Of a stretch of 64,000 nt of DNA, positions 9,917-52,476 are shown one piece after another (the first letter of the stretch is position 1; every line of letters begins with the position of its first letter). Position numbers and translations under genes: made by a program. The DNA is taken from the IMG/VR virus record IMGVR_UViG_3300043570_001980, positions 1 through 64,000 of that record; one strand, 5' to 3'. The notes beneath the pieces were generated by a model that had not been told where the DNA came from, searched no databases, and worked only from the letters and a program-made list of their open reading frames with translations.

Positions 9917-9945
9917 TTGACCAATAAATCCTGTTTGTGTATAAT
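9917..9945 (+). promoter_or_regulatory. Sigma70 promoter
   Basis: TTGACC-N17-TATAAT; ATG at 9952. Confidence 0.85.
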
Positions 9946-9971
9946 AGCTACATGAACAGGATTTTTCTTTT
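9926..9971 (+). terminator. Terminator-like hairpin enclosing a -10 box
   Basis: AAATCCTGTT / AACAGGATTT perfect 10-bp inverted repeat, then TTCTTTT. Confidence 0.6.
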
Positions 9972-10167
9972 ATCCATTTTATTAATTACAGGGTGTACAT
10001 CTACCCGGCCGCCTGTTGACGTCACACTCATTCCTGATGATTGTGCCAATCGACATGCTATAATCAGATGGTTAGAAACTCAGAGTACCCAAAATGATTC
10101 TGCAGAATTTCAACGCCAAGTCCGTGGCCGTATTTGGCGCATCCGTTATATTTGTCAGCCTGTTTAG
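9952..10167 (+). CDS. Small lipoprotein
   Basis: MNRIFLLSILLITGC lipobox. Confidence 0.75.
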   Translation: MNRIFLLSILLITGCTSTRPPVDVTLIPDDCANRHAIIRWLETQSTQNDSAEFQRQVRGRIWRIRYICQPV

Positions 10168-10435
10168 TGGCTGTGCTGTACAACAGCCGATGCATGCCAT
10201 TGATTTAGAAAGCTTTCAAATCAATTGTCGCATTAAAGAACAGCAAATGCAATTTTTGCAGAGCATGCGTTCTGGAAGAGATGAACGCATGCTGGCAGGT
10301 GTGGGAAATTTAACACAACCCTGGAGCCGTTGGACAAACAATGAAGAACACTACCAGCGTCGAAGTATTCATAATGGGCGCACAAACTGGTTGATTAATC
10401 AACATCTAATGCACTTGTCTAGAGATTGTTCATGA
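10094..10435 (+). CDS. Lipoprotein
   Basis: Hydrophobic stretch then LFSGC lipobox; start uncertain. Confidence 0.7.
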   Translation: MILQNFNAKSVAVFGASVIFVSLFSGCAVQQPMHAIDLESFQINCRIKEQQMQFLQSMRSGRDERMLAGVGNLTQPWSRWTNNEEHYQRRSIHNGRTNWLINQHLMHLSRDCS

Positions 10436-10989
10436 AAAAAACATTAATACTTTTACTGATACCAGCGGCTGTTAGTGCTCAAGAATGTGTGCTACAAGAT
10501 CGTACAGTGACCAAAACGTCAGCGGTTATTGCAGAACGCAGTCAGATCAGGAGAGATGTAGTTGCCACTGCTTCTGGTAAAAAATGCATAGTTGACTTCA
10601 GAGCCAGAGTGGGGGTAAATTGGCATACTGCATTTGGTGAGTACAATTGGTCCGGTGACAGACCTGAAAATGAAGCCTGTGCCATTGCAGTTTCTAGAGC
10701 CGATGATTCGGTTAGAGAACGTGTGGGCAAAAACCAAACCACCAATGAAAAAGTTCTGGTCTGCAAGGACCAACCAAAATTGTCCGTTCTGTCTAGCACA
10801 CAAGTTGGTACAGTTGGTGATGTTGGTCAATTTAGGCCCCATCCAGAATACCCAAAACGTTTTTATCATAATGGAACCGAATGTAAATGGTTTGTTGAAT
10901 CTAATTTTGTTGCTCGTGATATTCGAACATACCAAGGTGTTATCTGCCAAATCCGAGAAGGAAAATGGGTAGTTACGGACAAATTTTGA
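10432..10989 (+). CDS. Secreted Cys-containing protein
   Basis: MKKTLILLLIPAAVSA signal peptide; 6 Cys. Confidence 0.75.
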   Translation: MKKTLILLLIPAAVSAQECVLQDRTVTKTSAVIAERSQIRRDVVATASGKKCIVDFRARVGVNWHTAFGEYNWSGDRPENEACAIAVSRADDSVRERVGKNQTTNEKVLVCKDQPKLSVLSSTQVGTVGDVGQFRPHPEYPKRFYHNGTECKWFVESNFVARDIRTYQGVICQIREGKWVVTDKF

Positions 10990-10990
10990 C

Positions 10991-11445: not shown

Positions 11446-12033
11446 ATGAAAAAACTTATTTTATTGGCACCCATTGTGGTTATTTTGGCGGCATGTAGTT
11501 CGTCTCCCAAAGACCCCTACGAACGCAGGGTTTACCATGATGAACAGCGCAGAGAAAAAGCGGCCGAACAGGCCATTGACCGAGCACCCAAATGGATGAC
11601 TGACCTACCAGTTTCTAAATCTGCTGTTTATCAAAATGGTACGGCTGTGAGCCCAGATTACAGCATGGCAGTTAGCAAAGCTAAAACCGTTGCATTTGGT
11701 AAAATTTGTATGAGTGCAGGCGGCCGTGTAAATCAGCAAAGCAAGATTTACCGAACAGACAGTGAAAATGCCAGCACTGAGTTCAGCGAACTGGCAATTA
11801 AAACATATTGCCCAGGTGTTGATATTTCGGGTGTGGAAGTTGCCGCAGAAGGCATCAAAGTTATTCCAGAAAATGGGCGTTTCAGAGCCTATGTTTTAAT
11901 TGCACTACCAATTGGGGAGGCAAACGGAATCCAGAAAGTGACTGATGCTCGTAACCAGCGCAGATTAGCCGAAACCCGTAGTCGTGAAAGCTTTAAAGAG
12001 ATGGAACGTACAGAAACTCAAAAGCCCCAGTAA
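11446..12033 (+). CDS. Lipoprotein (LPP20-like)
   Basis: ILAAC lipobox; PKW...G.A.S.D..MA...A pattern. Confidence 0.7.
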   Translation: MKKLILLAPIVVILAACSSSPKDPYERRVYHDEQRREKAAEQAIDRAPKWMTDLPVSKSAVYQNGTAVSPDYSMAVSKAKTVAFGKICMSAGGRVNQQSKIYRTDSENASTEFSELAIKTYCPGVDISGVEVAAEGIKVIPENGRFRAYVLIALPIGEANGIQKVTDARNQRRLAETRSRESFKEMERTETQKPQ

Positions 12034-12050
12034 GTTCACCATAAGTACTA

Positions 12051-12101
12051 GGGTTAGCTAAAAGTGTGCTATAATACACTTTTAGTTGACCCTTTTCTTT
12101 T
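12051..12101 (+). terminator. 17-bp hairpin with extended -10 box in the loop
   Basis: GGGTTAGCTAAAAGTGT-GCTATAAT-ACACTTTTAGTTGACCC then TTTTCTTTT; the two mismatches are G-U compatible. Confidence 0.7.
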
Positions 12102-12113
12102 GAGCGAGATTAC

Positions 12114-12689
12114 ATGACACAAATTAAAGATGACGAAGATTACATTAGCCCTGGACAAAGCTTGCTTGAAGCTGGTATGTATGCCTTTATGGGTCCAGTA
12201 GATACCGAAAGTGTTAAGCCGGTAATTGAATGGATTCTTCATGCCAACTATGTTGTTAAGAAAAAGAAAAAAGAACTACTGCTAATGATTTGCAGTGAAG
12301 GTGGAGATTTGGAGCCTGCCTTTGCATTGATCGACGTAATGCAGAGTAGCAACATACCAATCAAGACTGTTGGGCTAGGTCAGATTTCTTCTTCGGGTTT
12401 GTTGATATTTCTAGCAGGAACTCCAGGCCGAAGATTGTTAACCCCAAATACCAGTATTTTGAGTCATCAATTTAGTTGGGGATCAGATGGCAAAGCACAC
12501 GAACTGTTTGCCACAGTCAAAGAGTTTGAACTCTGCCAGAAACGAATGCTTAATCACTATAAACAGGCCACTGGACTTGATGAAGATAAACTAAAACAAT
12601 GCTTGTTGCCACCACATGATGTCTGGCTCAGTGCCGAGGAAGCACTGGACTTTGGAATCTGCAATTCCATTAGCCGACTTGCTCGTTAA
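12114..12689 (+). CDS. clpP: Clp protease proteolytic subunit-like
   Basis: ICSEGG, GLGQISSSG (catalytic Ser position), SHQ (His), DVWLSAEEALDFG (Asp). Confidence 0.88.
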   Translation: MTQIKDDEDYISPGQSLLEAGMYAFMGPVDTESVKPVIEWILHANYVVKKKKKELLLMICSEGGDLEPAFALIDVMQSSNIPIKTVGLGQISSSGLLIFLAGTPGRRLLTPNTSILSHQFSWGSDGKAHELFATVKEFELCQKRMLNHYKQATGLDEDKLKQCLLPPHDVWLSAEEALDFGICNSISRLAR

Positions 12690-14291: not shown

Positions 14292-15599
14292 ATGGAACAA
14301 AATAAATTGAATATCAACCAACAAACTTTTTGTATTAGTCCCTGGACTGAAGTCAGGATCAATTCAGACGGCACAATGAACTTTTGTCATTTTGCTGATC
14401 GTGCTGACTTACCAAACAGTGAGCATATCAATTCAATGACTGTGGATGAGTATTTTTCAAATTCAAATTCAGCACAATCTGCAAGAAAAAATATACTCAA
14501 TGGAAACCCTGTTGCCCGATGTCATCGTTGCTATAAAGAAGATCAACACAGTGAAGTAACATTTCGTAGTCGCAGAAATCTGCAGGCTGCTATATTTCCG
14601 GGACAGGATTTTCAACAAAGCGCAGAAGAAAGTCCTGTTTGGAAAATTATCAATGCTGATAAATCTAGTCCAAGATTTTATCATATTAGCTTTAGTAATA
14701 TTTGCAACATGGCCTGTGTGATGTGTGATGGGTTTAACAGCACACTATTGGCTGCCGATTTAAATAAAATTGGCCTAAGAGATTCTAGTATTCCGATCAA
14801 ACACGACTGGACTGATACACCCACTTGGGGAAAATTCTGTGATCACTTGTTAAACAACAATGATATTGTTTGTCTGCATGTCATGGGCGGAGAACCGTTG
14901 TACCATAAACGATTTAGAGATTTGATAACATTCTTGTGCAACAACAATCACACAGATTTCCATCTTACTTTTGTGACCAATGGAACTATCTACGATCCAG
15001 AGTTGATGACACAATTAGAAAAATTTAAGTCTGTGCAGATTGAAATCAGCATTGAGAATCTAGACATTAGTAATGATTATATTCGATACCCAGGAAAAAC
15101 TAGCAAGATTGTCGACAACATTCGACAATATCTAGCCCACTCAAATGAAAAATTTAGCACAGTATTACGCACAGTTCCGCAACTGTTAAGTCTGATGCAC
15201 TACGATAAACTTTTGGATTTTTGTCTAGAACACTCTATCATTATTGACAGTAATGTCCTACATCGTCCAGAGTTTTTTAGACCCTGTTACCTTCCTAACT
15301 CGGCCAAGGAAGTAATTAAATCAAGACTTGCAAGATTTATTCTCAAAGATAAAGATGTACTGCACAATATTAACGTTAGAAATCAATCAAGAGTGGTAGA
15401 ATCAATATCTCATCATGCACAAATGATTATAGGATTGTTGGACCAGACTGGAGTCAACATAGAAACTGTTAGACAAGAACTAACTGACTATTGTGCTAAA
15501 TTTGATCAATTACGAGAACATGACTTGCGTGAGTTTGTGCCAGAACTAGCAGAATTTTTAGATGAGTACGGTTATGCAAAAAAACGATATCAAAATTAA
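14292..15599 (+). CDS. Radical SAM protein
   Basis: CNMACVMC; GGEP; N-terminal FCISPW and CxxC auxiliary motif. Confidence 0.9.
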   Translation: MEQNKLNINQQTFCISPWTEVRINSDGTMNFCHFADRADLPNSEHINSMTVDEYFSNSNSAQSARKNILNGNPVARCHRCYKEDQHSEVTFRSRRNLQAAIFPGQDFQQSAEESPVWKIINADKSSPRFYHISFSNICNMACVMCDGFNSTLLAADLNKIGLRDSSIPIKHDWTDTPTWGKFCDHLLNNNDIVCLHVMGGEPLYHKRFRDLITFLCNNNHTDFHLTFVTNGTIYDPELMTQLEKFKSVQIEISIENLDISNDYIRYPGKTSKIVDNIRQYLAHSNEKFSTVLRTVPQLLSLMHYDKLLDFCLEHSIIIDSNVLHRPEFFRPCYLPNSAKEVIKSRLARFILKDKDVLHNINVRNQSRVVESISHHAQMIIGLLDQTGVNIETVRQELTDYCAKFDQLREHDLREFVPELAEFLDEYGYAKKRYQN

Positions 15600-16530: not shown

Positions 16531-16687
16531 TCTCTAATGGTTTCTACTGAGTAATTAAAAATCAATCATTAAGCACCAAGTTAATGACTAAAATACCCAA
16601 GAATCGGACTCAACTAGCCCTGATACTGGATATATCTTTAAATAATTCTGCAGGTTATACAATCTGCTTTTTTAAGGAGTCTATATT

Positions 16688-16918
16688 ATGGACAAAGCGT
16701 ATGGAATGGTCAGTGCCTTTTTAGGCCAAATTGTTGACCTTGGTATTAAGTTAATCGCCGTTGGCGTTGTACTTCAAATTTTATTTGGAGCCGCCGTGCC
16801 CTTCTTGGGTATCGACGTTGTTGGTAGCATTGTTAAACTGGTCTCTGCCTTGGGCAGTCAAGGACTAGTTGGCTTGGTATCAATTGGTGTGATATATTGG
16901 GCATTTAACAAGAAGTAA
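16688..16918 (+). CDS. Small multi-TM membrane protein
   Basis: 76 aa, largely hydrophobic; AAGGAG SD; TAAATA at 16639. Confidence 0.75.
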   Translation: MDKAYGMVSAFLGQIVDLGIKLIAVGVVLQILFGAAVPFLGIDVVGSIVKLVSALGSQGLVGLVSIGVIYWAFNKK

Positions 16919-30459: not shown

Positions 30460-30563
30460 TGTTGCGTAAAAACAACACTCAATCTGCTTAAAAAATAGAC
30501 AGAAAGTGTTGTTTTTTCACAACACACAAAACAGTTGACCAGAATTACCCATTTTGCTATAAT
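30460..30563 (+). promoter_or_regulatory. Early promoter with upstream palindromes
   Basis: TGTTG-N8-CAACA at 30460 and 30507; TCTG...CAGA at 30483; TTGACC(30535)-N17-TATAAT. Confidence 0.85.
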
Positions 30564-30594
30564 AGAAGTATAGTAAGAAACAAAGGAGTTAGAT

Positions 30595-39836: not shown

Positions 39837-40678
39837 AAATTTATGTAACTAGCGATATCCATCTTGAGTTTGGAGATTGCATGATCAAGAACGAGGACAA
39901 TGCTGATGTGTTGATTCTTGGTGGCGACATCATGCTGGCACAAGACTTGCACGACCATCCTGAAAGCAACCAATTACTCACCGGGGCAATGTTGGAAACT
40001 CTGGGCTCTCGACAGAAAAATGCTGTGCGCTTTCGTGAGTTCTTGAGTCGCTGTAGCTTTCAATTTCCGCATGTGATCTATGTGGCTGGCAATCATGAAT
40101 TCTATCATGGCAAGTGGCCTATTGGCATCGAATACCTAAGAGAAGAATGTGTCAAGTTCCCCAACGTATACTTCATGGAAAACGACTCTAAAACCATCAA
40201 TGATGTCACCTTTGTTGGAAGCACATTGTGGACTGACATGAACCGAGGTGATCCACTGACCTTGCATGCCATTGCGGACATGATGAACGACTTCCGAATC
40301 ATCCGCAACAGTGATCTTGGTTTTACTACCCTGCGTCCAGCACATGTGGCACAGGCACACAAAAAGAGTGTGAGCTACATTAGATCAGTTGTAGCAGAAC
40401 AACATGATAGAAAGTTTGTGGTTGTGGGACACATGGCACCCAGTCGTATGAGTACTCATCCAAGATGGGCCAATGAACAGTTGATGAACGGTGGCTATAG
40501 CAGTAGTCTAGATGAGTTTATCCTGGATCACCCGCAGATTAAACTGTGGACACACGGGCACACCCATGAAGATTTTGACTATATGATTGGATCAACTCGT
40601 ATTGTGTGCAACCCACGTGGATACATCAACTACGAAGAACGTGCTGATCAATGGAAACCAAAGCTGGTGGAAATTTGA
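39833..40678 (+). CDS. Calcineurin-like metallophosphoesterase
   Basis: SDIHLE, GGD, AGNHE, GHMAP, HGHTH. Confidence 0.92.
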   Translation: MKIYVTSDIHLEFGDCMIKNEDNADVLILGGDIMLAQDLHDHPESNQLLTGAMLETLGSRQKNAVRFREFLSRCSFQFPHVIYVAGNHEFYHGKWPIGIEYLREECVKFPNVYFMENDSKTINDVTFVGSTLWTDMNRGDPLTLHAIADMMNDFRIIRNSDLGFTTLRPAHVAQAHKKSVSYIRSVVAEQHDRKFVVVGHMAPSRMSTHPRWANEQLMNGGYSSSLDEFILDHPQIKLWTHGHTHEDFDYMIGSTRIVCNPRGYINYEERADQWKPKLVEI

Positions 40679-42922: not shown

Positions 42923-42942
42923 CTGCAAATCTAACATGCGCA

Positions 42943-42966
42943 GGTTTGCGGTAAATACTGCAAACC
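42943..42966 (+). promoter_or_regulatory. Late promoter at a hairpin apex
   Basis: GGTTTGCGG-TAAATA-CTGCAAACC. Confidence 0.6.
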
Positions 42967-42982
42967 AAAAGGATCTAGGCGC

Positions 42983-45900
42983 ATGTCCCAAGAAATTATC
43001 AATTACGGAGCCGCACCCAATGACGGCACAGGTGATCCGTTACGTGTAGCATTCATAAAAACCGACAATAATTTTGACCAAATCTGGGCCGCCGGTCCTG
43101 TTGGCTCAAATATTACCATACTCAACAACACCATACAGGTTACCAATACCAATGGTAATCTAACGCTGGCCACCAACGGAACTGGTGTTATTTCTACTAG
43201 AAATCATGTGCGCCCAAATATATCGCAGGTGTATGATATTGGTACCGCAAATCTACGATATCGGTTGGGTTATTTTACTGGCCTAAACATTGACGGCAAC
43301 GTGACAATTACAGGAAACTTGTCAGCAGGAAATATCAGTTACACCAGCAACGTTTTTGTTGGGGATTTAAAAGGTAGTGTGTTTGCAGATGACAGCACCA
43401 TAATGGTTGATGCCATTGACAATGTACTACGAGCCGGGGCAATTTACACAGATGACTATTTCTATGCCAATGGATCACCACTGGTATCCAGCTACGGCAA
43501 TGCCAATGTTACTGCATTGCTGGGCAATTTGGGCAGTAATACTATCAGCGGCACAGGTAACATCACAAGCACTGGTAACATTTCAGGTGGAAATATTCTT
43601 GGCAATGGTAGACAACTAACTGGCATTGTAAGTTCATATGGCAATAGTAATGTCACCACATTGTTGGGCAATTTAGGTAGTAATACTATCAGCGGAACAG
43701 GTAACATCACAAGCACTGGCAACATTTCAGGTGGATTTATTTTAGGTAACATCAGCCTAGCAAATGGATTTCCGGCAACATATGGCAATAGTAATGTCAC
43801 AACTTTGTTGAGCAATTTAGGTACCAATGTCATCAGTGGAACAGGCAACATCACAACCACCGCCAACATTTCTGGTTCTTACGTCAAAGGCAACGGCAGT
43901 CAACTCACTGGAATTTCAACTGCCGACACAGGCAATGTGACCTTTGATGATGTCAACATCATTGGCACAGGTAACTTAAATCTACAACCAAATGGTAGCA
44001 GTAGCGAATATTTAAATATTTACTTGACCGGGGCCGCGGATATACATGTGGCAGCCGGTGGTGGTAGTGGAAATGTAATTTTGGGCACAGATGAAGAAGC
44101 CAATGTTGCTGTTTTACAGGGCGGCAACGTGGCCATACAGGCCGGTAATGTTGCTGGAACCAAAACCTGGACATTTGACACCGCTGGCAACTTGACCTTG
44201 CCATTGAATAGTGTTGTTTATGAAACCAACATTCCGGATCAGGGACTTAGTGGTAGTGCCATTGCTTTAAAACCAACAGGTGGAACCAATGCTGATCAAG
44301 AGTTGTTGATTTATCCCACAGTCAATGATGCAAATCACTTGCACTTGACCACGGGCAACTTATACAACACAGAGTTGTTCTTAGGTGACGATAACCTGTA
44401 CGTCAAACTGGCCAACACCGGTAATATAGTGATCAACAGCAATGACGATGTGGGCAACTCAGCACAATGGACATTTGATCCCACTGGTAACTTGACCTTG
44501 CCATTAGGCAGTATTGTTTATGAAACCAACATTCCGGACCAATCACTTAGTGGTAGTGCCATTGCTTTAAAACCAACAGGTGGAACTACTACCAATCAAC
44601 AGTTATTGATTTATCCAACAGCGAATGACGGTGACCATATACACATGACAAGTGGAAACTTGTATACAACCGAGTTGTTCTTAGGTAGTGATAACTTCTA
44701 TGTCAAGTTAGCAAATACAGGTAATGTTGTTATCAATACCAACGACAACGCAGGCAACACAGCACAGTGGACCTTTGGCACAGGTGGTACTACACAATTC
44801 CCTAATAGCGTAATACTAGCACCAGTTAGTGAAAGTATCACTATGCAGAGTGATCAATATTCACAGTTGATGTGGCAAAACGCTAATGTAATCGTGGCCC
44901 CAAATATGGCCATTAACTCAAACTTCTATGTATCACAAAACAATGCTACCTTGGATATTGCCAAACGCGATGGTAGTGGTACTCAAGTAACCAAATCGTG
45001 GTATTGGAATGCAGATGGCACCCTAACATTACCAACCGCTGGTCGAATAAATTTTGATTATCTTTCTATCAGCAGTGATGCCAATGTTTCGGCATTTTAT
45101 GCTCCGGCTGGAAATGTTCAACTTGCTGCCGGCATTGGTGATGCACAAATAGTTGCAAATTCTCTAAATGATTCTAAGACCTGGACCTTTGGCAACACTG
45201 GTAATTTAACTGCTCCTGGCAACGTCAGTGCTGTGGGCAATGTCACTGCTGGTAACATATCAGCTGGATCAGGCACTATAACTGGCGGAAATATCAATGG
45301 TGCAAATTTCAATGGCAATGTAGCATTTGGCACTGGTACAGTAGGAGGTTCTGGCAACATCACAGGTGGCAACATCTTAACTGCAGGCATTGTCAGTGCC
45401 ACTGGCAACGTGTCTGGTAACTTTTTTATTGGTAATGGTAGCCAGTTAACTGGCATAGCCTCAAGTTATGGCAATGCCAATGTGGCCACATTCTTGGCTG
45501 CATATGGTAGCAATACTATCACAACCACAGGAAACATCACAGCCGGTAACTTGATTGGTAACATTTCAATTACCAGCAATGTGGTCGGTACGCAGGCAAA
45601 TGTTACCCTAGTTGCCGGCAGTTATTCCACTGTGTTTGACAACACCGGAAACTTGACTCTACCTGGCAATACTTTTGCTGTGAACTATGCCAACAACACC
45701 CCGGTGCCTGTGGTCACAAGGGTTGAGGGTTCCTGGACGGTGCCTGTGGGCAACAGCACCCAGAGTTTCACTGTGCCGATCAACAACACATATCAACTAT
45801 GGGTCAACTGCAACATACCCAACGGTATCATAGTCTACAATGCCACGGTCAGTGTGTCCAACACCAACGTGCCAGCAATAGGATATCAGTATGCCTGGAA

Positions 45901-46081
45901 CTATACAGGCGGTGGCAACATATTGGCGTTTACTAGCATCCCTGCTCAAATCATAGGCACAGCCGGTGCTATCAGCAATGCTTCCCCTGCTGTGGCCAAT
46001 ACCAATGTGTTCTCTTTTGGTATCGACAACACCAGCGGCGGTAATGTCACTGTGAATTACGGTTGGATCCAAATCAGTTAA
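42983..46081 (+). CDS. Long tail fibre/baseplate-attached protein
   Basis: T4 gp10-like N-terminus (IINYGAAPNDGTGDPLR...NNFD); Gly/Asn/Thr beta-repeats; internal duplications. Confidence 0.85.
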   Translation: MSQEIINYGAAPNDGTGDPLRVAFIKTDNNFDQIWAAGPVGSNITILNNTIQVTNTNGNLTLATNGTGVISTRNHVRPNISQVYDIGTANLRYRLGYFTGLNIDGNVTITGNLSAGNISYTSNVFVGDLKGSVFADDSTIMVDAIDNVLRAGAIYTDDYFYANGSPLVSSYGNANVTALLGNLGSNTISGTGNITSTGNISGGNILGNGRQLTGIVSSYGNSNVTTLLGNLGSNTISGTGNITSTGNISGGFILGNISLANGFPATYGNSNVTTLLSNLGTNVISGTGNITTTANISGSYVKGNGSQLTGISTADTGNVTFDDVNIIGTGNLNLQPNGSSSEYLNIYLTGAADIHVAAGGGSGNVILGTDEEANVAVLQGGNVAIQAGNVAGTKTWTFDTAGNLTLPLNSVVYETNIPDQGLSGSAIALKPTGGTNADQELLIYPTVNDANHLHLTTGNLYNTELFLGDDNLYVKLANTGNIVINSNDDVGNSAQWTFDPTGNLTLPLGSIVYETNIPDQSLSGSAIALKPTGGTTTNQQLLIYPTANDGDHIHMTSGNLYTTELFLGSDNFYVKLANTGNVVINTNDNAGNTAQWTFGTGGTTQFPNSVILAPVSESITMQSDQYSQLMWQNANVIVAPNMAINSNFYVSQNNATLDIAKRDGSGTQVTKSWYWNADGTLTLPTAGRINFDYLSISSDANVSAFYAPAGNVQLAAGIGDAQIVANSLNDSKTWTFGNTGNLTAPGNVSAVGNVTAGNISAGSGTITGGNINGANFNGNVAFGTGTVGGSGNITGGNILTAGIVSATGNVSGNFFIGNGSQLTGIASSYGNANVATFLAAYGSNTITTTGNITAGNLIGNISITSNVVGTQANVTLVAGSYSTVFDNTGNLTLPGNTFAVNYANNTPVPVVTRVEGSWTVPVGNSTQSFTVPINNTYQLWVNCNIPNGIIVYNATVSVSNTNVPAIGYQYAWNYTGGGNILAFTSIPAQIIGTAGAISNASPAVANTNVFSFGIDNTSGGNVTVNYGWIQIS
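43487..43925 (+). repeat. 3 x 144-bp coding repeat
   Basis: SYGN.NVT.LL.NLG.N.ISGTGNIT.T.NISG units near 43490, 43634 and 43778. Confidence 0.9.
44168..44780 (+). repeat. 2 x 300-bp coding repeat
   Basis: WTFD..GNLTLP...YETNIPDQ.LSGSAIALKPTGG units at 44168 and 44468. Confidence 0.95.
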
Positions 46082-46131
46082 TGGATCAACCATGATCATA
46101 TCAAACTAACACAAAAAACAAAGGAACAATT

Positions 46132-46641
46132 ATGGGATTTTTAAAAGGCACAGATGGTATAGCAAGAACAATACGCAATCCTTTGGAAGGCTCCATTGGT
46201 GATGTAGCACTGGACGATATCAAAACAAACACGCTGACAGCCACAGGCAACGTCACAGGTGGCAACTTGGTTACCAGTGGCAACGTGACTGGCAATGTCA
46301 ACGGTTTTGCGTTGGGTTACCGAGACATACCGCAGGTGGCATTTACAGGCAACACAACCATTACCACAACCGATGCTGGCAAACATTATTACTCAACACA
46401 AAGCACAAACTACAGCCTGGTTATACCTCCCAATTCTGGCCAAATACAACAGATTGGTGCCGCCATCACTGTGGTCAATCAAGGCACAGGCAACATCACC
46501 GTGTCACAAGGGCCTGGCGTTACACTATATCTAGCTGGCAATGCCACCTCTAGCAATAGAACCGTATCCACATTTGGTATGGCCACTCTGATAAAAGTTG
46601 ATACTGACACTTGGTTTATCAACGGTACGGGGGTGGCATAA
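46132..46641 (+). CDS. Fibre-associated structural protein
   Basis: GNVTGGNLVTSGNV repeats; GYRDIPQ; C-terminus LIKVDTDTWFING. Confidence 0.75.
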   Translation: MGFLKGTDGIARTIRNPLEGSIGDVALDDIKTNTLTATGNVTGGNLVTSGNVTGNVNGFALGYRDIPQVAFTGNTTITTTDAGKHYYSTQSTNYSLVIPPNSGQIQQIGAAITVVNQGTGNITVSQGPGVTLYLAGNATSSNRTVSTFGMATLIKVDTDTWFINGTGVA

Positions 46642-47381
46642 TGAGCGGTGCAATGATGGCCATGATGGCTAATGTACCCAGTGCTGTGAGTTATACCGCC
46701 TTGGCCGGTAGCCTGCAGTTCAACGGAAGCAGTCAATATCTCAGTATGACGCCAGGCTTTGCTCTGGGCACCGGTGCTTATACCATAGAAGGTTGGTTCT
46801 ACAACAATGCCGACTATACCAGTCAAAGGGCGTTTGTTGCCACAGATCAATCTGGTGCGCTAAGTTTGTTCAACACTGATGCACAGTCATTTACCTTGGA
46901 CAAATATGGTGGTGGTGGTGCCAGGACTTATACTTTTCCCAGCAACACCCTACAAATCAACAAGTGGCAATACATCATATTGAACCGCAATGCCAGCACA
47001 CAGGTAGAAACCATGTGGGTGGGCACCTTTGTCAACACCAATTCTTATGTGACCTGCAGTCGTGCTACAGGTGCCGCAGGCGGAACCAGTGTGAGCGGTG
47101 GCACACAGGTCAATAATCTTGATTACACAGGCGTGTGTAACTGGATAGGCAAATTCTACGGGGGCTATTGGCCTGGCTTTATCACCAATCTAAGAGCCAC
47201 TGTGGGCACAGCAGTTTATGACAGCACCAGTGCCACTGTGACAGCACCTTCGGCACCATTAACTAGTCCGGCCAATACCCAGTATTTGATGTTGGGTGCG
47301 GCTGTGACCACTGACACTTCAAGTGTTCAGACTGTTACAAACAACAACACAGTAACGCAAAATGCATTGAAACCTTTTTAA
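46641..47381 (+). CDS. Concanavalin A/LamG-like virion protein
   Basis: SLQFNGSSQYL, YTIEGWFY, GFITNLR...GTAVY. Confidence 0.75.
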   Translation: MSGAMMAMMANVPSAVSYTALAGSLQFNGSSQYLSMTPGFALGTGAYTIEGWFYNNADYTSQRAFVATDQSGALSLFNTDAQSFTLDKYGGGGARTYTFPSNTLQINKWQYIILNRNASTQVETMWVGTFVNTNSYVTCSRATGAAGGTSVSGGTQVNNLDYTGVCNWIGKFYGGYWPGFITNLRATVGTAVYDSTSATVTAPSAPLTSPANTQYLMLGAAVTTDTSSVQTVTNNNTVTQNALKPF

Positions 47382-47391
47382 AGAATAATAA

Positions 47392-48081
47392 ATGATAATC
47401 CAAGGCGTAACCCTCAACGGCACAAGAGTAGTAGATGCTAGTATCATCACACAGAATCTTGCCATCTGGATCGATGCTGACAATGCTAGCAGTTATCCCG
47501 GTAGTGGAACAACAGTAACAGATTTATCTGGAAATGGATACACCAATACATTGACTGGCGCAACATACACTATGTTGAACGGGGTAAAGTGTTTTGATTG
47601 TACCACAGGTAATAGTAGAGTTGTTGTAAATGGTACCGGTCCTACATTACCAACAACAGGATATACATATATCACATGGGCTAGATTAGAAGCAGGCAAT
47701 CCAGCATCATTTAGAACATTGCTTTATACAAATTCACCTAAATACACTCCAATCACAATTCCCAATAACTCAAATACATTAGGATATTGGGACACCGCAT
47801 TCAGAAGTTCAGGATATGACCTCGCTTCTTCGGTTGGCGTATGGGTTCAATATGCTGTGGTAGGGGACGATTCATCTCAAACATTTTATATAAATGGCAT
47901 ACAAGCGGGAAGTTCAATAGCATATGGGGCAGGCGGAACCACACATTGGGGTTGGGGTAATAACGATACTGCGGGTCAACCCTGGGGCTATGTGGCCAAT
48001 ATGTTCCTGTATAATACCAAACTCACCCAGGAACAGCTACAGCAGAACTACTATGGTCTACGATCAAGATTTGGATTGTAA
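47392..48081 (+). CDS. Concanavalin A/LamG-like virion protein
   Basis: DA.N.SSYPGSGTT.TDLSGNG...YNTKLTQEQLQQNY...R.RFGL. Confidence 0.75.
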   Translation: MIIQGVTLNGTRVVDASIITQNLAIWIDADNASSYPGSGTTVTDLSGNGYTNTLTGATYTMLNGVKCFDCTTGNSRVVVNGTGPTLPTTGYTYITWARLEAGNPASFRTLLYTNSPKYTPITIPNNSNTLGYWDTAFRSSGYDLASSVGVWVQYAVVGDDSSQTFYINGIQAGSSIAYGAGGTTHWGWGNNDTAGQPWGYVANMFLYNTKLTQEQLQQNYYGLRSRFGL

Positions 48082-48123
48082 AACTGATACTAAACGCCAT
48101 AAATATTGTAAACAAGGATTAGC

Positions 48124-48384
48124 ATGTCAAGAGAAATTATCAACGTAGGAACCTCGCCAAACGATGGCACCGGTGATCCTCTACGCACAGCATACACAAA
48201 ATGTAACAATAATTTTGCTGAATTATATAGTCGTGTACAAGATATTCCCCCAGGAACGTCTGTGGGCACCACTGGCGATCTAGCCGGAATGATTGCCTAC
48301 GATGATCAATATTTTTATTACTGCTATCAAGACTACGACGGCAGCAGTAATGTTTGGAAAAGAGTAGCTGGATCATCTTTCTAA
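48124..48384 (+). CDS. 86-aa gp10-like mini protein
   Basis: IINVGTSPNDGTGDPLR..Y.KCNNNF.ELY; TAAATA at 48100. Confidence 0.75.
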   Translation: MSREIINVGTSPNDGTGDPLRTAYTKCNNNFAELYSRVQDIPPGTSVGTTGDLAGMIAYDDQYFYYCYQDYDGSSNVWKRVAGSSF

Positions 48385-48385
48385 C

Positions 48386-51300
48386 ATGTCAACCCAACCA
48401 ACTTGGATCACAGCGGCTGGTAGTTTAGGTACTATACCTGAGGGTATATTTTACCAAGTTCCAATTTTGGCTGAAACATACGGCGAAGAAATCTACTATC
48501 GAATGATTGCCGGACAACTGCCCGATGGAATCCAATGTCGTAAAACTGGTATTATTGAAGGTGTCCCAAAAGCAATTGCCAGCCTGCAAGGTGTTCCTGC
48601 AGAGGTTTCTAGAGATGTCACTTATAGATTTGCGGTCCGAGCATACACTGAAAAATTAGTCAACGGAAAAGAAGTTGTAGACCGTCTTACTGACAGAACC
48701 TTTGAGCTAACAGTAACAGGGCAGGATGCTCCTGACTTTATTACTCCGCCAGGCAATATTGGCACGTTCTATGATGGAACCGAAGTGCATATTCAAATTG
48801 AGTATGTAGACACTGACCCCGGAGACACAGTAAAAGTCAGTTATTTGTCAGGCACCCTTCCTCCTGGATTGATTGTTACTTCTTCAGGATTAATAACTGG
48901 AATTATTAAACCATTAACTGGTGTGCCAGGCACAGCCGAACCCGGCTACGATATGTCACAGTACGAAGAATATCCTTTTGATTTTTCAACACGTAGTACC
49001 AGTAAAAATTATCAATTTAGCCTAGAACTCAGTGACGGCAAAGACAGTAACATACGCACTTTTGAAATATTTGTCTACAGCAAAGATTCAATGAGTGCAG
49101 ACACCACAGATTTCACAGCAGACAACACATTTATCACTGCCGACGTTGTTCCCATACGTACTCCAGTGATGATTACCCCTCCTGGCGATCTAGGCAGGAT
49201 CAGAGCTGACAATTTCTTTGCATTTAAATTTGATGCCATTGACTTTGACGGAGATCCAATTGAGTACAGCTTAACTGTTGGCGCCGGCATTGGATTTGAC
49301 GCCAGCGGAACAGTATACGACGAAGATGGTGTTGGATTTGATCGTGGAACATTTAGTCTCCCACCAGGTCTTTCACTGAATCCAACAACTGGTTGGTTTT
49401 ATGGATATATTCCGGCCATTGGAGCAACAGAAAATACCTACAAGTTTGCAATCCGTGTATTAAAAGCCAACGACCCCACAATCATTTCTGAGTTTTACTA
49501 TTACACAATGACCATCATTGGCAATGTGGAAACAGATGTTATCTGGCTGACTGACCCAGATTTAGGCACTATAGACAATGGTGCTATTAGTCTCTACTCA
49601 GTGGAAGCATACAACACCGGGGGTCGTCCTTTAGAATATCAACTGTTGTCAGGTTCTGACAGCAAGCTTCCTCAGGGTCTTAGATTATTGCCTTCAGGGA
49701 ACATAGTAGGTAAAGTTAGTTTTAATACATTTGCCCTGGACAGCGGAACAACCACGTTTGACACAGATCCTAGTACCCGAGTTGTTGCTGATCCAACTAC
49801 GTTTGACTTAAAGTTTGATTTTACTGTCAACGCATACAGTCCTCAAACAGCTACCTCGGGTTATAAAGTTTCAGCAATTCAGATTACCAACGGTGGATCA
49901 GGATATGTATCTGCACCAACTGTGACTATTTCTGCTCCCCCAAGCACTTCGAATTCAGAACGTGCAACTGCTGGCGTAGTGACCATAGTTGGTGGTGTTA
50001 TCACTAGTATTGCTCTGGGCAACGGCGGATTTGGATATGTAAGCCCACCAACTGTTACCATCACTGGCGGTGGCGGAGTTGGTGCAACAGCCACAGTACA
50101 AGTTGAAGATACAGCAAATATAAACCTTGTGTCTGTGTTCCGTAGATTTTCTATCACAGTAAATCGTGCATACAACGAGCCTTACGAAAAATTATATATC
50201 AAGGCCATGCCTCCTCTAAAAGATCGTGCAATCATTGGACAACTGGTACAAAATCAGGATATTATTCCTGCAGATTTGATATATCGCTCTGATGATGCCA
50301 ATTTTGGAATATCACAGAATGTGGTATATGATCACGCATATGGATTGACTGCATCAAGTTTAGAAAAATATATTTCTAGCTTAGACATCAACCACTATTG
50401 GAAAAACCTAACACTTGGCGATATCAAAACTGCACAAGCACTGGACAACAATGGCAAGGTTATCTATGAAATTGTCTACAGTGAAATTATTGACAATCTA
50501 GTCAACAACGAAGGACAAAGTGTTGGCAAGGCTGTGACTCTTGCTTACCCTATTAATGCTGGTGATTCAACTGAGGTATCGGTGGTGTATCCAAATAGCC
50601 TAGTTGACATGCGAACCCAAGTGATCGATGTTGTTGGGCAAATTAGTCCAGTATTACCATTGTGGATGACATCAAAACAATCAAATGGACAAGTTTTAGG
50701 ATTTACAACTGCCTGGGTAATTGCGTATGTTAAACCAGGCAGTTCGGGTAGAATTGCCTATAACATTAAAGAACTGTTTGGTCAAGAGCTCAATATCATT
50801 GATTTTGAAGTTGATAGATATGAACTAGACCGCTCACTGACTTACAACTGGTTCCCTTATGAAGATAGTGTGTTTGGCGGCAAGTGGATTCCGTACCCAC
50901 CGGCAGCCACTACATTTGATACTGTAGAACGCCCGCTGGGATTAAGATACATTGGACAGGTTGATTATGTTACTACATTGGCATATTCACAAATTAATAA
51001 TCAAACGTTAGACTACATCAGATCCCTGGGTGGTATAGATGGAGCATCAGGACGTTTTTTAAACGGCGAAACTCTCATCTTAAAGAAGCAAGAAAACTTT
51101 GGTGGAATGACTATAGATGAAGCCTTTAGCAATTATCTAGGAGGTTACGATCCCACACAACCAGCTATAGTTCCCTACGATGATGGCACCTATGATGAGT
51201 CAGTGGTAATTCCCCCGCCTGAACGTCTGGATGTTTATAGAATTTCCATCACTGCTGAAAATGTGGTATTTTTAACTCCAGTTCTACAAGTGGTCCCCAA

Positions 51301-51535
51301 CGACTATGTTAAAATTTTAAACGGGAATACTTATAGGGGTCAAGAGTTGTATGTTCCTTACGCGGCGCCGCCCGGATTAACCTATCGCGCCTGGACTTAC
51401 ATTCCAGAAAGACCAACAACTCCTACCATCTTTGATGGTAATAGTACTAGATTTATAGCACCAGTTAATATATTAACAAACACCGATGTGTACGATAAAT
51501 ATCTGGTATTTCCAAAGAGGACAATTTTAGGATAA
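48386..51535 (+). CDS. Baseplate wedge-like protein with Ig-like domains
   Basis: Repeated W.T..G.LG / LPPGL.L segments; 1049 aa in the structural operon. Confidence 0.75.
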   Translation: MSTQPTWITAAGSLGTIPEGIFYQVPILAETYGEEIYYRMIAGQLPDGIQCRKTGIIEGVPKAIASLQGVPAEVSRDVTYRFAVRAYTEKLVNGKEVVDRLTDRTFELTVTGQDAPDFITPPGNIGTFYDGTEVHIQIEYVDTDPGDTVKVSYLSGTLPPGLIVTSSGLITGIIKPLTGVPGTAEPGYDMSQYEEYPFDFSTRSTSKNYQFSLELSDGKDSNIRTFEIFVYSKDSMSADTTDFTADNTFITADVVPIRTPVMITPPGDLGRIRADNFFAFKFDAIDFDGDPIEYSLTVGAGIGFDASGTVYDEDGVGFDRGTFSLPPGLSLNPTTGWFYGYIPAIGATENTYKFAIRVLKANDPTIISEFYYYTMTIIGNVETDVIWLTDPDLGTIDNGAISLYSVEAYNTGGRPLEYQLLSGSDSKLPQGLRLLPSGNIVGKVSFNTFALDSGTTTFDTDPSTRVVADPTTFDLKFDFTVNAYSPQTATSGYKVSAIQITNGGSGYVSAPTVTISAPPSTSNSERATAGVVTIVGGVITSIALGNGGFGYVSPPTVTITGGGGVGATATVQVEDTANINLVSVFRRFSITVNRAYNEPYEKLYIKAMPPLKDRAIIGQLVQNQDIIPADLIYRSDDANFGISQNVVYDHAYGLTASSLEKYISSLDINHYWKNLTLGDIKTAQALDNNGKVIYEIVYSEIIDNLVNNEGQSVGKAVTLAYPINAGDSTEVSVVYPNSLVDMRTQVIDVVGQISPVLPLWMTSKQSNGQVLGFTTAWVIAYVKPGSSGRIAYNIKELFGQELNIIDFEVDRYELDRSLTYNWFPYEDSVFGGKWIPYPPAATTFDTVERPLGLRYIGQVDYVTTLAYSQINNQTLDYIRSLGGIDGASGRFLNGETLILKKQENFGGMTIDEAFSNYLGGYDPTQPAIVPYDDGTYDESVVIPPPERLDVYRISITAENVVFLTPVLQVVPNDYVKILNGNTYRGQELYVPYAAPPGLTYRAWTYIPERPTTPTIFDGNSTRFIAPVNILTNTDVYDKYLVFPKRTILG

Positions 51536-51538
51536 AAT

Positions 51539-52420
51539 ATGGCAAGTAATATCAACCCAAACAACATTGACGGCACCTACCCAGTTGCTGGTCAGGACAA
51601 CGATAGTCAAGGTTTTCGTGACAATTTTACCAACACAAAAACCAATTTTGCTTATGCGTCGGCTGAAATCAGCGACCTTCAGAGCAAGGTAATTTTAAAA
51701 GCGGCGCTAACCGGATCAACCTTGGACAATAACATGGGTGGTAGTTTACTACAAAACGCTCAGTTACAAGACATGAGCGAAACTCGTGTTGCACTAGGAA
51801 CAGTCACTGGATCGCAGACAATTAACTACGCTGCCGGACCATACTATACATTAACAACATCTGGCGCTATTACTCTTTCTTTTACTAATTTTCCAGCCGC
51901 AGGATCAGTGGCACGTTTGCGCTTGCAGATCAACATTGCCAGCACCAGCCACACGCTGACATTGCCAGCTGCCGTTAGTCTAGGAACTAGCAACATTCAA
52001 GGTCTTGCCAGCAATATTATTACATTTAATAAAACAGGTACCTATGAATTTGAATTTGAAACTGGCGATGGTGGAAGTACAATTACCATCATTGACCAAA
52101 ACAGAAACCTAGATCCAATTTACCTACCAAGTTCCGAAGACTTGGCATCTGGTGGTGCCGCAAACGTATTGTTGACTACATCATATTTTAGTACGTCGGC
52201 TGCTGAAACTGCTACGTTGGCAGCCGGTTACACTGGTCAGGTCAAAGTATTTGCCATGTACGCTGACAGCGGAGACATGGTTATTACAGTGACCAATGCA
52301 GGATGGAAGTCATCAGGCACAGGCACAATTACATTTGACACTATTGGCGATGCATGTACACTGATGTACATTAACTCAAAATGGTTTGCCATTGGCGCAA
52401 ACGGTGTGACATTTGCCTAA
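51539..52420 (+). CDS. Virion structural protein (baseplate/fibre)
   Basis: YPVAGQDNDSQGFRDNF...EI.DLQ coiled coil, then a beta-rich region. Confidence 0.75.
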   Translation: MASNINPNNIDGTYPVAGQDNDSQGFRDNFTNTKTNFAYASAEISDLQSKVILKAALTGSTLDNNMGGSLLQNAQLQDMSETRVALGTVTGSQTINYAAGPYYTLTTSGAITLSFTNFPAAGSVARLRLQINIASTSHTLTLPAAVSLGTSNIQGLASNIITFNKTGTYEFEFETGDGGSTITIIDQNRNLDPIYLPSSEDLASGGAANVLLTTSYFSTSAAETATLAAGYTGQVKVFAMYADSGDMVITVTNAGWKSSGTGTITFDTIGDACTLMYINSKWFAIGANGVTFA

Positions 52421-52429
52421 CCAAAACAC

Positions 52430-52476
52430 TTGACCTTACAGGCCCTTATTGCTATAATAGCATCAAGGGCTTTTTT
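52430..52476 (+). promoter_or_regulatory. Sigma70 promoter embedded in a terminator hairpin
   Basis: TTGACC(52430)-N17-TATAAT(52453); AGGCCCTT..TGCTA-TAA-TAGCA..AAGGGCTT then T run. Confidence 0.8.

What the first reader, a model, noticed from the sequence alone, without database searches (positions are those of the whole stretch)
9917..52476. Promoter core elements repeatedly placed at the apex of terminator-like hairpins
Seen four times: 9926-9964 (10-bp stem, TATAAT in the loop, right arm holds the ATG); 12051-12092 (17-bp stem with 2 G-U pairs, loop GCTATAAT, no -35 found); 52440-52476 (TATAAT across the tip); 42943-42966 (late TAAATA at the tip). Three are followed by T runs. Known: T4 uses hairpins spanning a promoter so that read-through RNA is blocked while RNA started inside is free; N4 uses DNA hairpin promoters. 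Inference: a compact stop-and-restart insulator, or a cruciform/supercoiling-sensitive promoter class.
Basis: partly seen in the sequence, partly recalled or inferred. Interest (0 to 1): 0.65.

Follow-up and report, generated by a model that had tools for sequence, protein, structure and literature searches.

The report
Promoters nested inside terminator hairpins
In this uncultured T4-related jumbo phage, several promoters lie inside terminator-like hairpins. RNA arriving from upstream would be stopped or silenced, while RNA started inside escapes. The design is real and conserved, but it is a known kind: the PeSL promoter-terminator cassettes of T4-like phages.

Summary
Three of them (9917-9971, 12050-12101, 52430-52476) are strong hairpins followed by a T-run, with a sigma-70-type -10 box at the tip. 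A fourth of this kind lies outside the window, at genome position 71129. This is not chance. No shuffle reproduced it. TATAAT beats every composition-matched hexamer at hairpin tips. In 1.35 Mb of related phage DNA there are 48 such nested elements on the coding strand and 1 on the control strand. At the loci of sites 1 and 3 the stems covary while -35 and -10 stay fixed.

The predicted start site lies in the right arm, so the promoter's own RNA lacks the left arm and is unstructured. The right arm often carries the ribosome-binding site or the start codon.

Site 4 (42934-42986) is different. It has no T-run. A T4-late-type TAAATA motif sits in a hairpin loop, and an outer stem pairs with the start codon. 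This resembles the translational mask of T4 gene e.

The phage has a T4-type capsid gene and a gp55-like late sigma factor. The elements match published PeSLs, so this is a new member of a known kind. Termination and initiation are inferred, because no RNA run was listed. Nothing supports the cruciform or N4-like idea.

The parts
9917..9945 (+). Site 1 promoter: -35 TTGACC (9917-9922), 17-nt spacer, -10 TATAAT (9940-9945)
   Evidence: Exact pattern match. Top-ranked promoter in the tool scan, 11 of 12. PWM score 28.6 bits.
9926..9971 (+). Site 1 terminator-like hairpin (9926-9964, 16 pairs) plus T-run (9962-9971). The left arm is the promoter spacer, the -10 is at the tip, and the right arm holds the ATG.
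   Evidence: dG -18.2, z -5.1. Called as a terminator by the tool. In 18 orthologous elements 97% of cells are paired, 6 of 13 pairs change on both sides, and 0 of 500 shuffles reach this.
9952..10167 (+). Small lipoprotein-like gene (MNRIFLLSILLITGC...). Its ATG lies 6 nt after the -10, so the mRNA is probably leaderless. The T-run encodes part of the signal peptide.
   Evidence: Sequence reading. ATG at N6 after the -10 in 10 of 41 promoters, P=7e-9. RNA from 9952 onward is unstructured, -3.4.
12050..12101 (+). Site 2 terminator-like hairpin (12050-12093, 19 pairs, loop of 6) plus T-run (12093-12101). It lies 16 nt after the stop of gene 11446-12033.
   Evidence: dG -26.7, z -6.2. Top terminator in the tool scan. 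A terminator at this position is kept in most relatives.
12067..12075 (+). Site 2 extended -10, TGCTATAAT, at the hairpin tip, with no -35. It is lineage-specific: the closest relative reads TATAAC here.
   Evidence: The -10 block scores 17.5 bits; the best promoters score 18.9. Not conserved in L011 and L012. Similar tips arose independently in L072, L047, L077, L032 and L037.
12114..12689 (+). ClpP-like protease gene downstream of site 2
   Evidence: phrog_94 and phrog_1827: head maturation protease or ATP-dependent protease, E 4e-19.
52430..52458 (+). Site 3 promoter: -35 TTGACC, 17-nt spacer, TG-extended -10 TATAAT (52453-52458)
   Evidence: 11 of 12, with TG. TTGAC and the TA...T of the -10 are invariant or nearly so in 32 orthologous elements.
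52441..52476 (+). Site 3 terminator-like hairpin (52441-52471) plus T-run (52471-52476). The right arm, AAGGGC, resembles a ribosome-binding site and the T-run is the spacer to the ATG at 52481.
   Evidence: dG -17.1, z -3.7. For the 13-pair helix, 85% of cells pair against 37-52% when slid, 10 of 13 pairs change on both sides, and 0 of 500 shuffles reach this. Not called by the simple scan, because of an internal loop.
52481..52720 (+). 79-aa gene (MEHPLI...) served by the site 3 promoter. In many relatives the same gene is leaderless, with -10, 6 nt, then ATG, and no hairpin.
42934..42986 (+). Site 4: inner hairpin 42943-42966 with the T4-late-like motif TAAATA (42952-42957) in the loop. An outer stem, 42934-41 with 42979-86, pairs with the start codon (ATG 42983). 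The ribosome-binding site AAGGA is at 42969-73. There is no T-run.
   Evidence: dG -24.3, z -3.5; RNA from the predicted late start is unstructured, -2.4. Six distinct relatives keep the motif in a loop or left arm and keep the AUG paired, using different stems, z -2.2 to -5.0. TAAATA occurs 28 times against 1 upstream of genes.
42983..52420 (+). Presumed late operon of seven genes, tail, baseplate and fibre-like. It is bounded by site 4 at its start and site 3 at its end.
   Evidence: PHROG hits to minor tail, virion structural, baseplate wedge connector and tail fibre proteins. No convincing + strand terminator inside it.
30470..30563 (+). Tandem composite: terminator 30470-30514, then promoter 30535-30563. 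It is the site of a cassette-bounded indel against a close relative.
   Evidence: Relative G001 carries an extra 117-aa ORF between two promoter cassettes here.
16639..16690 (+). TAAATA (16639), then hairpin 16650-16667, a T-run, a ribosome-binding site and ATG 16688: a late-type motif abutting a terminator-like hairpin.
   Evidence: The same layout is the family consensus upstream of the ClpP-like gene.

Best explanation
Sites 1-3, and a fourth at genome position 71129, are composite promoter-terminator cassettes of the PeSL kind in a nested form.

An intrinsic-terminator hairpin is laid over a host sigma-70-type early promoter. Its left arm is the -35/-10 spacer. The -10 box is at the tip. 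The start site falls in the loop or right arm. The T-run follows. RNA polymerase arriving from upstream transcribes both arms and the U-run and terminates. If it reads through, the ribosome-binding site or start codon in the right arm stays paired. RNA started at the embedded promoter lacks the left arm, cannot fold, is not terminated, and has a free ribosome-binding site or a 5'-terminal AUG. The result is that the downstream gene is expressed only from its own promoter, within 50-80 nt of intergenic DNA.

Site 4 applies the same logic to a T4-late-type promoter (TAAATA, gp55-like sigma), but only at the level of translation. Early read-through RNA masks the start codon of the first late structural gene, and late RNA started in the loop does not.

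Shown here: the sequences, the predicted folds, the enrichment, the conservation and the covariation. Inferred: start sites, termination, timing and the translational effects.
For: - Anatomy and folds. Read-through RNAs fold at -17 to -27 kcal/mol, z -3.5 to -6.2. RNAs from the predicted start sites fold at -1.7 to -4.5, no better than shuffles.
- Promoter class. There are 22 exact TTGACC-N17-TATAAT matches on the + strand and 0 on the - strand. About 41 PWM promoters are all co-oriented with genes.
- Not chance.
- Selection on pairing together with the promoter boxes. Site 3: 10 of 13 pairs change on both sides and TTGAC and TA...T are invariant or nearly so. Site 1: 6 of 13 pairs, and one pair shows all four Watson-Crick types.
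- Terminator function. At the site 1 locus, relatives without the nested form have a canonical GC hairpin plus T-run directly before the same promoter. Nested ones have no other terminator.
- Promoter function. At the site 3 locus, hairpin-less relatives place the same gene's ATG 6 nt after the -10 with no ribosome-binding site, which only works if transcription starts there.
- The right arm carries AGGAG, AGGA or the ATG.
- Context. Site 3 separates tail and baseplate genes from a DNA-polymerase-like unit.
- T4-like background: gp23 and a gp55-like sigma. TAAATA occurs 28 times against 1 upstream of genes.
- Site 4 architecture is kept with different stems in six relatives.
- Published precedent: PeSLs (PMC2839356, PMC4122927) and T4 gene e and I-TevI (PMC3014915).
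Against: - There are no transcript data. No RNA run was listed for this phage, so no 5' or 3' end has been observed.
- The host is unknown, so sigma-70 recognition is assumed from the consensus.
- The site 2 promoter has no -35 and its -10 is not kept in the nearest relative. It may be young, weak or fortuitous.
- Polymerases terminating at the T-run must first cross the embedded promoter, so the nested form does not protect that promoter from occlusion.
- About half of the relatives at the site 3 locus have no hairpin at all, so termination there is dispensable.
- Stems at sites 1 and 2 are long and AT-rich, unlike the short GC-rich terminators elsewhere in the genome.
- A genome-wide tendency of TAAATA sites to mask their start codons was not significant.
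Confidence: 0.72

Rival explanations
1. The hairpins at sites 1-3 act mainly as translational masks or RNA-stability elements, not as terminators. They hide the ribosome-binding site or AUG in read-through RNA, as at site 4. The T-run is only the U-rich spacer or coding sequence.
For: - The right arms hold AGGAG, AGGA or the ATG.
- The site 1 T-run is inside the coding sequence.
- Site 4 shows that this phage family uses masks without a T-run.
- Hairpin-less relatives at the site 3 locus achieve the same insulation of translation by being leaderless, without any terminator.
Against: - A hairpin followed at once by 5-7 T is the canonical intrinsic terminator, and two sites are called as such by the tool.
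- At the site 1 locus the alternative state is a canonical terminator in front of the promoter.
- The two functions are not exclusive.
Confidence: 0.15
2. This is a DNA-level device. The inverted repeats extrude as cruciforms under negative supercoiling and expose or hide the -10, giving a supercoil-sensitive promoter. Or they are N4-like hairpin promoters read by a phage polymerase.
For: The inverted repeats of 16-19 bp with loops of 6-7 nt at sites 1 and 2 could in principle extrude.
Against: - The promoters are near-perfect sigma-70 consensus with a fixed 17-nt spacing.
- Only 3-4 of about 41 promoters of this class have the hairpin, and the rest work without one.
- The site 3 stem has an internal loop, and G-U pairs are tolerated. 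Those pair in RNA, not in DNA.
- Every nested element has a T-run, which a DNA device would not need.
- No single-subunit RNA polymerase was found (weak test).
- The related phage PA5oct depends on host polymerase (PMC7318152).
Confidence: 0.04
3. The inverted repeats are operators for a dimeric phage repressor that shuts off these early promoters by binding over the -10.
For: The palindromes overlap the -10. At the site 1 locus the outer half-sites AATCC and GGATT are invariant in 18 elements.
Against: - Arm sequences are unrelated between sites 1, 2, 3 and 71129.
- At the site 3 locus the arms are replaced wholesale while pairing is kept.
- G-U pairs count as conserved.
- The T-run is unexplained.
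Confidence: 0.05
4. The overlap is fortuitous. Terminators and promoters are simply crowded into short intergenic gaps, and the nesting itself has no function.
For: The intergenic gaps are only 52-80 nt. Site 2's -10 is lineage-specific. Within this one genome the counts are small, 3-4 cases.
Against: - 0 of 200 shuffles reproduce it.
- 48 against 1 between the strands in relatives.
- The geometry is conserved and covarying at two loci across proteins 50-97% identical.
Confidence: 0.03

Closest known systems
PeSLs (promoter-early stem-loops) of T4-like phages RB49/phi1, T4/PST and KVP40/nt-1 (Arbiol et al. 2010, PMC2839356; Comeau et al. 2014, PMC4122927)
   Same: - Strong sigma-70-like early promoters fused to a stem-loop that terminates upstream transcription.
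- The stem-loop may lie upstream of the -35, between the boxes, or overlapping the -10.
- The 3' end carries the ribosome-binding site and ATG.
- The cassettes are dispersed repeats in regions of small ORFs.
- They bound indels between close relatives. One such case is seen here at 30535.
- The phage background is T4-like.
   Different: - The host phage is an uncultured jumbo phage of about 342 kb. By capsid protein it is nearest to Sinorhizobium phage Phosso, Vibrio phage 2.275.O and PA5oct, not a classical T4-like phage.
- In the nested elements the hairpin spans the -10 and the start site, and the right arm supplies the ribosome-binding site or the ATG itself.
- Stems are not the G(n)...C(n) type.
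- The nested elements are locus-specific and conserved by covariation, rather than near-identical repeats.
- Nested, tandem and leaderless forms alternate at the same locus.
- Mini-circles and recombination were not tested.
T4 late-promoter-in-hairpin translational control (gene e lysozyme, I-TevI, soc, gene 49; reviewed in PMC3014915)
   Same: A late promoter motif lies within the 5' half or loop of an RNA structure that sequesters the translation start in longer early transcripts. Late transcripts start inside and are translatable. Site 4 and its orthologues fit this.
   Different: - The motif is TAAATA, with weakly conserved upstream bases, rather than TATAAATA.
- The gene is a large structural protein at the head of a tail and baseplate operon.
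- The effect is predicted only.
- No genome-wide trend was found.
Intrinsic (Rho-independent) terminators with adjacent promoters in compact phage genomes, as in the PA5oct promoter and terminator sets (PMC7318152)
   Same: A hairpin plus U-run at gene ends, TTGAC/TATAAT(A) promoters, and dependence on host RNA polymerase.
   Different: In the passages I read (term search), the PA5oct report mentions no promoter inside a terminator hairpin. I did not read the whole paper. Here the two are interleaved.
N4 early hairpin promoters (PMC4496689)
   Same: A promoter associated with a DNA hairpin.
   Different: By my recollection, N4 promoters are short hairpins with about 3-nt loops and conserved sequence, read by the virion RNA polymerase on single-stranded, supercoil-extruded DNA. 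I did not read the paper for this; it was only listed. Here the promoters are full sigma-70 consensus, the stems are long and variable, and each is followed by a T-run.

Membership tests
PeSL (promoter-early stem-loop) cassettes | Near-consensus sigma-70 early promoter (-35, about 17 nt, -10), repeated many times in the genome and co-oriented with genes | tested here: met
   22 exact TTGACC-N17-TATAAT matches on the + strand and 0 on the - strand. About 41 PWM promoters on the + strand against 2 on the - strand at the same cut-off.
PeSL (promoter-early stem-loop) cassettes | A stable stem-loop joined to the promoter: upstream of the -35, between the boxes, or overlapping the -10 | tested here: met
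   3 nested elements plus site 2, and 5 tandem, among 41 promoters. 33 promoters have no adjacent terminator, so only a minority of promoters are full composites.
PeSL (promoter-early stem-loop) cassettes | The stem-loop terminates transcription coming from upstream, and the promoter is active | not testable with these tools
   Only predicted (hairpin plus T-run) and supported by comparison. No RNA run was listed.
PeSL (promoter-early stem-loop) cassettes | Cassettes are dispersed repeats conserved over about 50-100 bp | tested here: inconclusive
   Plain and tandem promoter cassettes give 55-75 bp cross-matches at 78-100% identity. The nested elements share only the boxes and part of the spacer, because the spacer doubles as a locus-specific stem.
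PeSL (promoter-early stem-loop) cassettes | They lie in plastic regions of small ORFs, and indels or replacements between close relatives are bounded by cassettes | tested here: met
   An extra 117-aa ORF lies between two cassettes in G001 where the window has a single chimeric cassette at 30535. Different downstream genes follow the conserved elements at the loci of sites 1 and 3. Only one indel was examined in detail.
PeSL (promoter-early stem-loop) cassettes | T4-like phage background | tested here: met
   Gp23 capsid family at E 1e-100. gp55-like late sigma, phrog_12791 at 5e-76.
PeSL (promoter-early stem-loop) cassettes | Recombination between cassettes yields mini-circles | not testable with these tools
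   Needs inverse PCR on infected cells.
T4-type late-promoter translational mask (gene e, I-TevI) | A gp55-dependent late promoter motif just upstream of the gene, within the structure | tested here: met
   TAAATA at 42952-57, 31 nt before the ATG. The motif occurs 28 times against 1 upstream of genes, and ATAAATA 14 times against 0. A gp55-like sigma is present. The full TATAAATA octamer is not enriched, 7 and 5 per strand.
T4-type late-promoter translational mask (gene e, I-TevI) | Longer transcripts fold so that the start codon or ribosome-binding site is paired. Transcripts from the late start lack the 5' strand. | tested here: met
   Prediction only: -24.3 (z -3.5) against -2.4. The AUG is paired in six relatives with different stems.
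T4-type late-promoter translational mask (gene e, I-TevI) | Early transcription actually reads into the gene | tested here: inconclusive
   There is an early promoter at 38520 and no convincing + strand terminator before 42943. No RNA data.
Intrinsic terminator | A stem of at least 5 pairs with GC pairs, a loop of 3-8, then at least 5 T in 8 | tested here: met
   Sites 1 and 2 are called by the tool. Site 3 meets it only if its internal loop is allowed, and is not called. Site 4 does not meet it, as it has no T-run.
N4-type hairpin promoter | A short conserved hairpin with a 3-nt loop, read by a virion single-subunit RNA polymerase | tested here: not met
   Stems have 13-19 pairs and unrelated sequences. 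PF00940 gave no match, but the control genomes did not ring either, so absence of the polymerase is not shown.

The most novel reading that the evidence does not exclude
In this large family of uncultured jumbo phages, one intergenic locus can switch in evolution between three equivalent solutions: a terminator followed by a promoter, a promoter nested in a terminator whose right arm is the ribosome-binding site, and a leaderless promoter-ATG fusion. All three enforce 'expression only from the gene's own promoter'. If so, strict insulation of transcription and translation, with leaderless mRNA as a routine tool, would be a selected organising principle of these genomes. The nested hairpin would be a single element with three jobs: terminator, promoter spacer, and translation mask or ribosome-binding site. 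A bolder add-on is that the nested form also makes the promoter respond to DNA supercoiling.
Probability: 0.3. Interest if true: 0.6.

Novelty: new member of a known kind. Interest (0 to 1): 0.4.

Why it matters
- It shows that composite promoter-terminator cassettes, known from a few cultured T4-like phages, are also a conserved feature under selection in a very large clade of uncultured jumbo phages of about 340 kb.
- It gives covariation-backed examples in which one 30-45 nt hairpin would serve as terminator, promoter spacer and translation mask.
- For annotators it marks operon boundaries and gene starts, including leaderless ones, in genomes where most proteins have no known function.
- For synthetic biology it offers natural, very compact insulator parts.
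- It does not reveal a new mechanism.

Tried and rejected
- T4 late octamer. TATAAATA is not enriched, 7 and 5 per strand. The shorter TAAATA or ATAAATA is.
- Genome-wide masking of start codons at 25 TAAATA sites is not significant: 16 against 12.8 +/- 2.3 in shuffles, and AUG pairing 6 against 5.4. I therefore claim it only for site 4 and its orthologues.
- Nearest sequences. No near DNA match in the phage collection, and no protein match for the 1032-aa gene.
- RNA evidence. No run was listed.
- Rfam found no family in the window.
- A first terminator scan timed out and was rewritten.
- My crude gene caller over-extends starts and picks some spurious minus-strand ORFs. I used it only for rough context.
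- Search for a single-subunit RNA polymerase: no hit, but the control was silent, so it is uninformative.
- The large protein searches, structure prediction and complex prediction were not needed and were not used.


Full report
**What the window is.** The window is the first 64 kb of a 341,990-bp IMG/VR virus record (GC 40.7%, CheckV completeness 95%). The record encodes a T4-type major capsid protein (Pfam Gp23, E 1e-100). It also encodes a gp55-like late sigma factor at 205770-206675 (T4 gp55 match at E 3e-6; phrog_12791 at 5e-76). By capsid protein the nearest cultured phages are Sinorhizobium phage Phosso, Vibrio phage 2.275.O and Pseudomonas phage PA5oct, at 69-72% amino-acid identity. 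PA5oct is a jumbo phage that depends on host RNA polymerase and has TTGAC/TATAATA promoters (PMC7318152). Hundreds of related contigs, many of 300-350 kb, are present in IMG/VR.

**The observation.** All four structures are at the stated coordinates.
- Site 1 has TTGACC (9917), a 17-nt spacer and TATAAT (9940-45). The hairpin 9926-9964 has 16 pairs, and the T-run 9962-9971 follows. The ATG at 9952 is in the right arm, 6 nt after the -10, and opens a lipoprotein-like ORF.
- Site 2 has hairpin 12050-12093 with 19 pairs. An exact extended -10, TGCTATAAT, is at the tip, there is no -35, and a T-run follows.
- Site 3 has TTGACC (52430), a 17-nt spacer and a TG-extended TATAAT (52453-58). The hairpin is 52441-52471, followed by six T and, five bases later, the ATG at 52481.
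- Site 4 has hairpin 42943-42966 with TAAATA in the loop and no T-run.

The tool scan ranks 9917 and 52430 among the best promoters, and 12050 and 9926 among the best terminators. It misses site 3 as a terminator because of an internal loop. RNA folds of the read-through forms are strong, at -17 to -27 kcal/mol with z -3.5 to -6.2. A fifth element of the same kind lies outside the window at 71129-71172, before a DnaJ-like gene.

**Is it more than chance?**
- The genome has 22 exact TTGACC-N17-TATAAT matches on the + strand and none on the - strand. About 41 PWM promoters all lie on the + strand.
- Only 9917, 52430 and 71129 among these have a hairpin plus T-run centred on the -10; site 2, added by hand, is a fourth. 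Their dG runs from -12 to -26, while the hairpins over the other promoters' -10 boxes are no stronger than -8.3.
- Shuffling spacers and downstream sequence 200 times never produced one.
- Among 20 composition-matched hexamers, TATAAT is the commonest at the tips of hairpin-plus-T elements: 4 against 0-2, and 3 against 0 at dG <= -15.
- In 1.35 Mb of related loci there are 48 distinct nested elements and 34 tandem ones on the coding strand, against 1 and 0 on the opposite strand.

**Comparative evidence.**
- Downstream of the 293-aa gene (site 3 locus), nearly all relatives keep TTGAC(A/C/T), a 17-nt spacer and a TAnnnT box.
- In about half of them the box sits at the tip of a hairpin. The arms differ (GGCCCTT..., GACTCCTCTA..., AACTCCTTTGC...) but stay complementary. 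In 32 sequences 85% of cells pair, against 37-52% when slid. Ten of 13 pairs change on both sides, and 0 of 500 shuffles reach this.
- The right arm often reads AGGAG, and the T-run is the spacer to the ATG.
- In the other half there is no hairpin, and the same gene's ATG follows the -10 by 6 nt with no ribosome-binding site. That is a leaderless layout, and it only makes sense if transcription starts there.
- At the site 1 locus, relatives alternate between two forms. One is a canonical GC hairpin plus T-run directly in front of the promoter. The other is the nested form.
- The 18 nested elements pair in 97% of cells, with 6 covarying pairs and 0 of 500 shuffles.
- At the site 2 locus a terminator is kept in most relatives, but usually as a short GC hairpin preceded by TAAATA.
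- The TGCTATAAT tip of site 2 is missing in the closest relative. Similar tips arose separately in other lineages. I therefore treat the site 2 promoter as the least certain.

**Mechanism.** With a start site about 7 nt after the -10, the promoter's own RNA begins in the loop or right arm. It is predicted to be unstructured, at -1.7 to -4.5 kcal/mol, no better than shuffles. RNA from upstream contains both arms and the U-run. The element should therefore stop incoming transcription and also hide the ribosome-binding site or AUG if read-through occurs, while its own transcripts pass and are translated. Site 3 sits between a tail, baseplate and fibre gene block (42983-52420) and a unit that includes a DNA-polymerase-like gene.

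**Site 4** opens that late block.
- TAAATA is the most enriched hexamer upstream of genes, 28 against 1.
- An outer stem pairs with the start codon, giving -24.3 for the long RNA against -2.4 for RNA from the predicted late start.
- Six distinct relatives keep the motif in a loop or left arm and keep the AUG paired, using different stems.
- No + strand terminator lies between the early promoter at 38520 and site 4. Early read-through into the late gene is therefore plausible.
- This matches the control of T4 gene e and I-TevI (PMC3014915).

All functional statements are inferences, because no RNA run was listed.

**Comparison with what is known.** PeSLs of T4-like phages are strong sigma-70-like promoters joined to a terminator stem-loop. 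The stem-loop is most often between the -35 and -10 or overlapping the -10. Reporter assays have shown both the promoter and the terminator activity (PMC2839356, PMC4122927).

The present elements meet the testable defining features:
- promoter class;
- an attached stem-loop;
- a T4-like background;
- dispersed cassette repeats;
- one clear cassette-bounded indel against a close relative at 30535.

Activity and mini-circle formation could not be tested. I therefore file sites 1-3 as new members of the PeSL kind in a new phage clade.

The particulars that differ from published PeSLs:
- the hairpin spans the -10 and the start site;
- the right arm supplies the ribosome-binding site or ATG;
- nested, tandem and leaderless forms alternate at one locus.

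Site 4 is a new example of the T4 late-promoter mask.

**Rejected alternatives.**
- A cruciform or N4-like device. The promoters are sigma-70 consensus, G-U pairs and an internal loop are tolerated, a T-run is always present, most promoters of the class lack a hairpin, and no phage single-subunit polymerase was found in a weak test.
- A palindromic operator. The arms are unrelated between sites and are replaced wholesale while pairing is kept.
- Chance crowding, which the statistics above disfavour.

**Verdict.** The insulator interpretation is supported by inference, and the cruciform alternative is not. Novelty is a new member of a known kind. Interest is moderate, 0.4.

Noticed in passing
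window 9952, 17525, 17790, 20756, 35638, 38555; genome 117774, 295195: Probable leaderless mRNAs. In 10 of 41 strong promoters an ATG lies exactly 6 nt after the -10 (0.8 expected; P=7e-9), and 7 of these open ORFs of 41-149 aa with no ribosome-binding site. Many relatives express the MEHPLI gene this way.
   Followed up: partly
genome-wide, e.g. window 2654, 16639, 42952, 53837, 61332; minus strand 8394, 16515, 58691: There is a second promoter-like class. TAAATA or ATAAATA lies 20-35 nt before ATGs that have a ribosome-binding site (28 against 1 in controls), on both strands. This fits T4-type late promoters read with the gp55-like sigma encoded at genome 205770-206675.
   Followed up: partly
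window 30470-30600 against G001:C1:51100-52800: A close relative (about 91% DNA identity) carries an extra 117-aa ORF flanked by two promoter cassettes, where the window has one chimeric cassette. Two further small indels lie near window 19540 and 31380. This is the PeSL-style gain or loss of a gene cassette.
   Followed up: partly
window 12040-12047 and relatives L032, L037, L047, L049, L053, L077: A conserved CATAAGTA lies just upstream of the hairpin before the ClpP-like gene. In most of these relatives it is 24 nt before a -10-like box, and in several a TTG follows at -35. It is unclear whether this is a stop-codon context, a variant promoter element or a remnant.
   Followed up: no
window 42948-42958 and genome 261160-261170: The 11-mer GCGGTAAATAC occurs twice in the genome. 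Both copies sit at the tip of a small hairpin next to an ATG.
   Followed up: no
L193, L194, L198, L209 (site 1 locus of relatives): Some relatives have a terminator-like hairpin with cTAAATA in the loop, a ribosome-binding site in the right arm, then a T-run and ATG. This is the nested design built around the late-type motif instead of the sigma-70 -10.
   Followed up: no
window 1556-2557, 14292-15599, 39833-40678; genome 71176 onward: Auxiliary genes: a periplasmic phosphate-binding-protein-like gene (PBP_like_2, E 8e-35), a radical SAM/SPASM enzyme, a metallo-phosphoesterase, and a DnaJ-like J-domain protein.
   Followed up: no
genome about 160-205 kb: Almost all genes and all strong sigma-70-type promoters are on the + strand, except for one minus-strand block of about 45 kb. 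That block has no such promoters but does have TAAATA motifs, so it is probably late structural genes.
   Followed up: no
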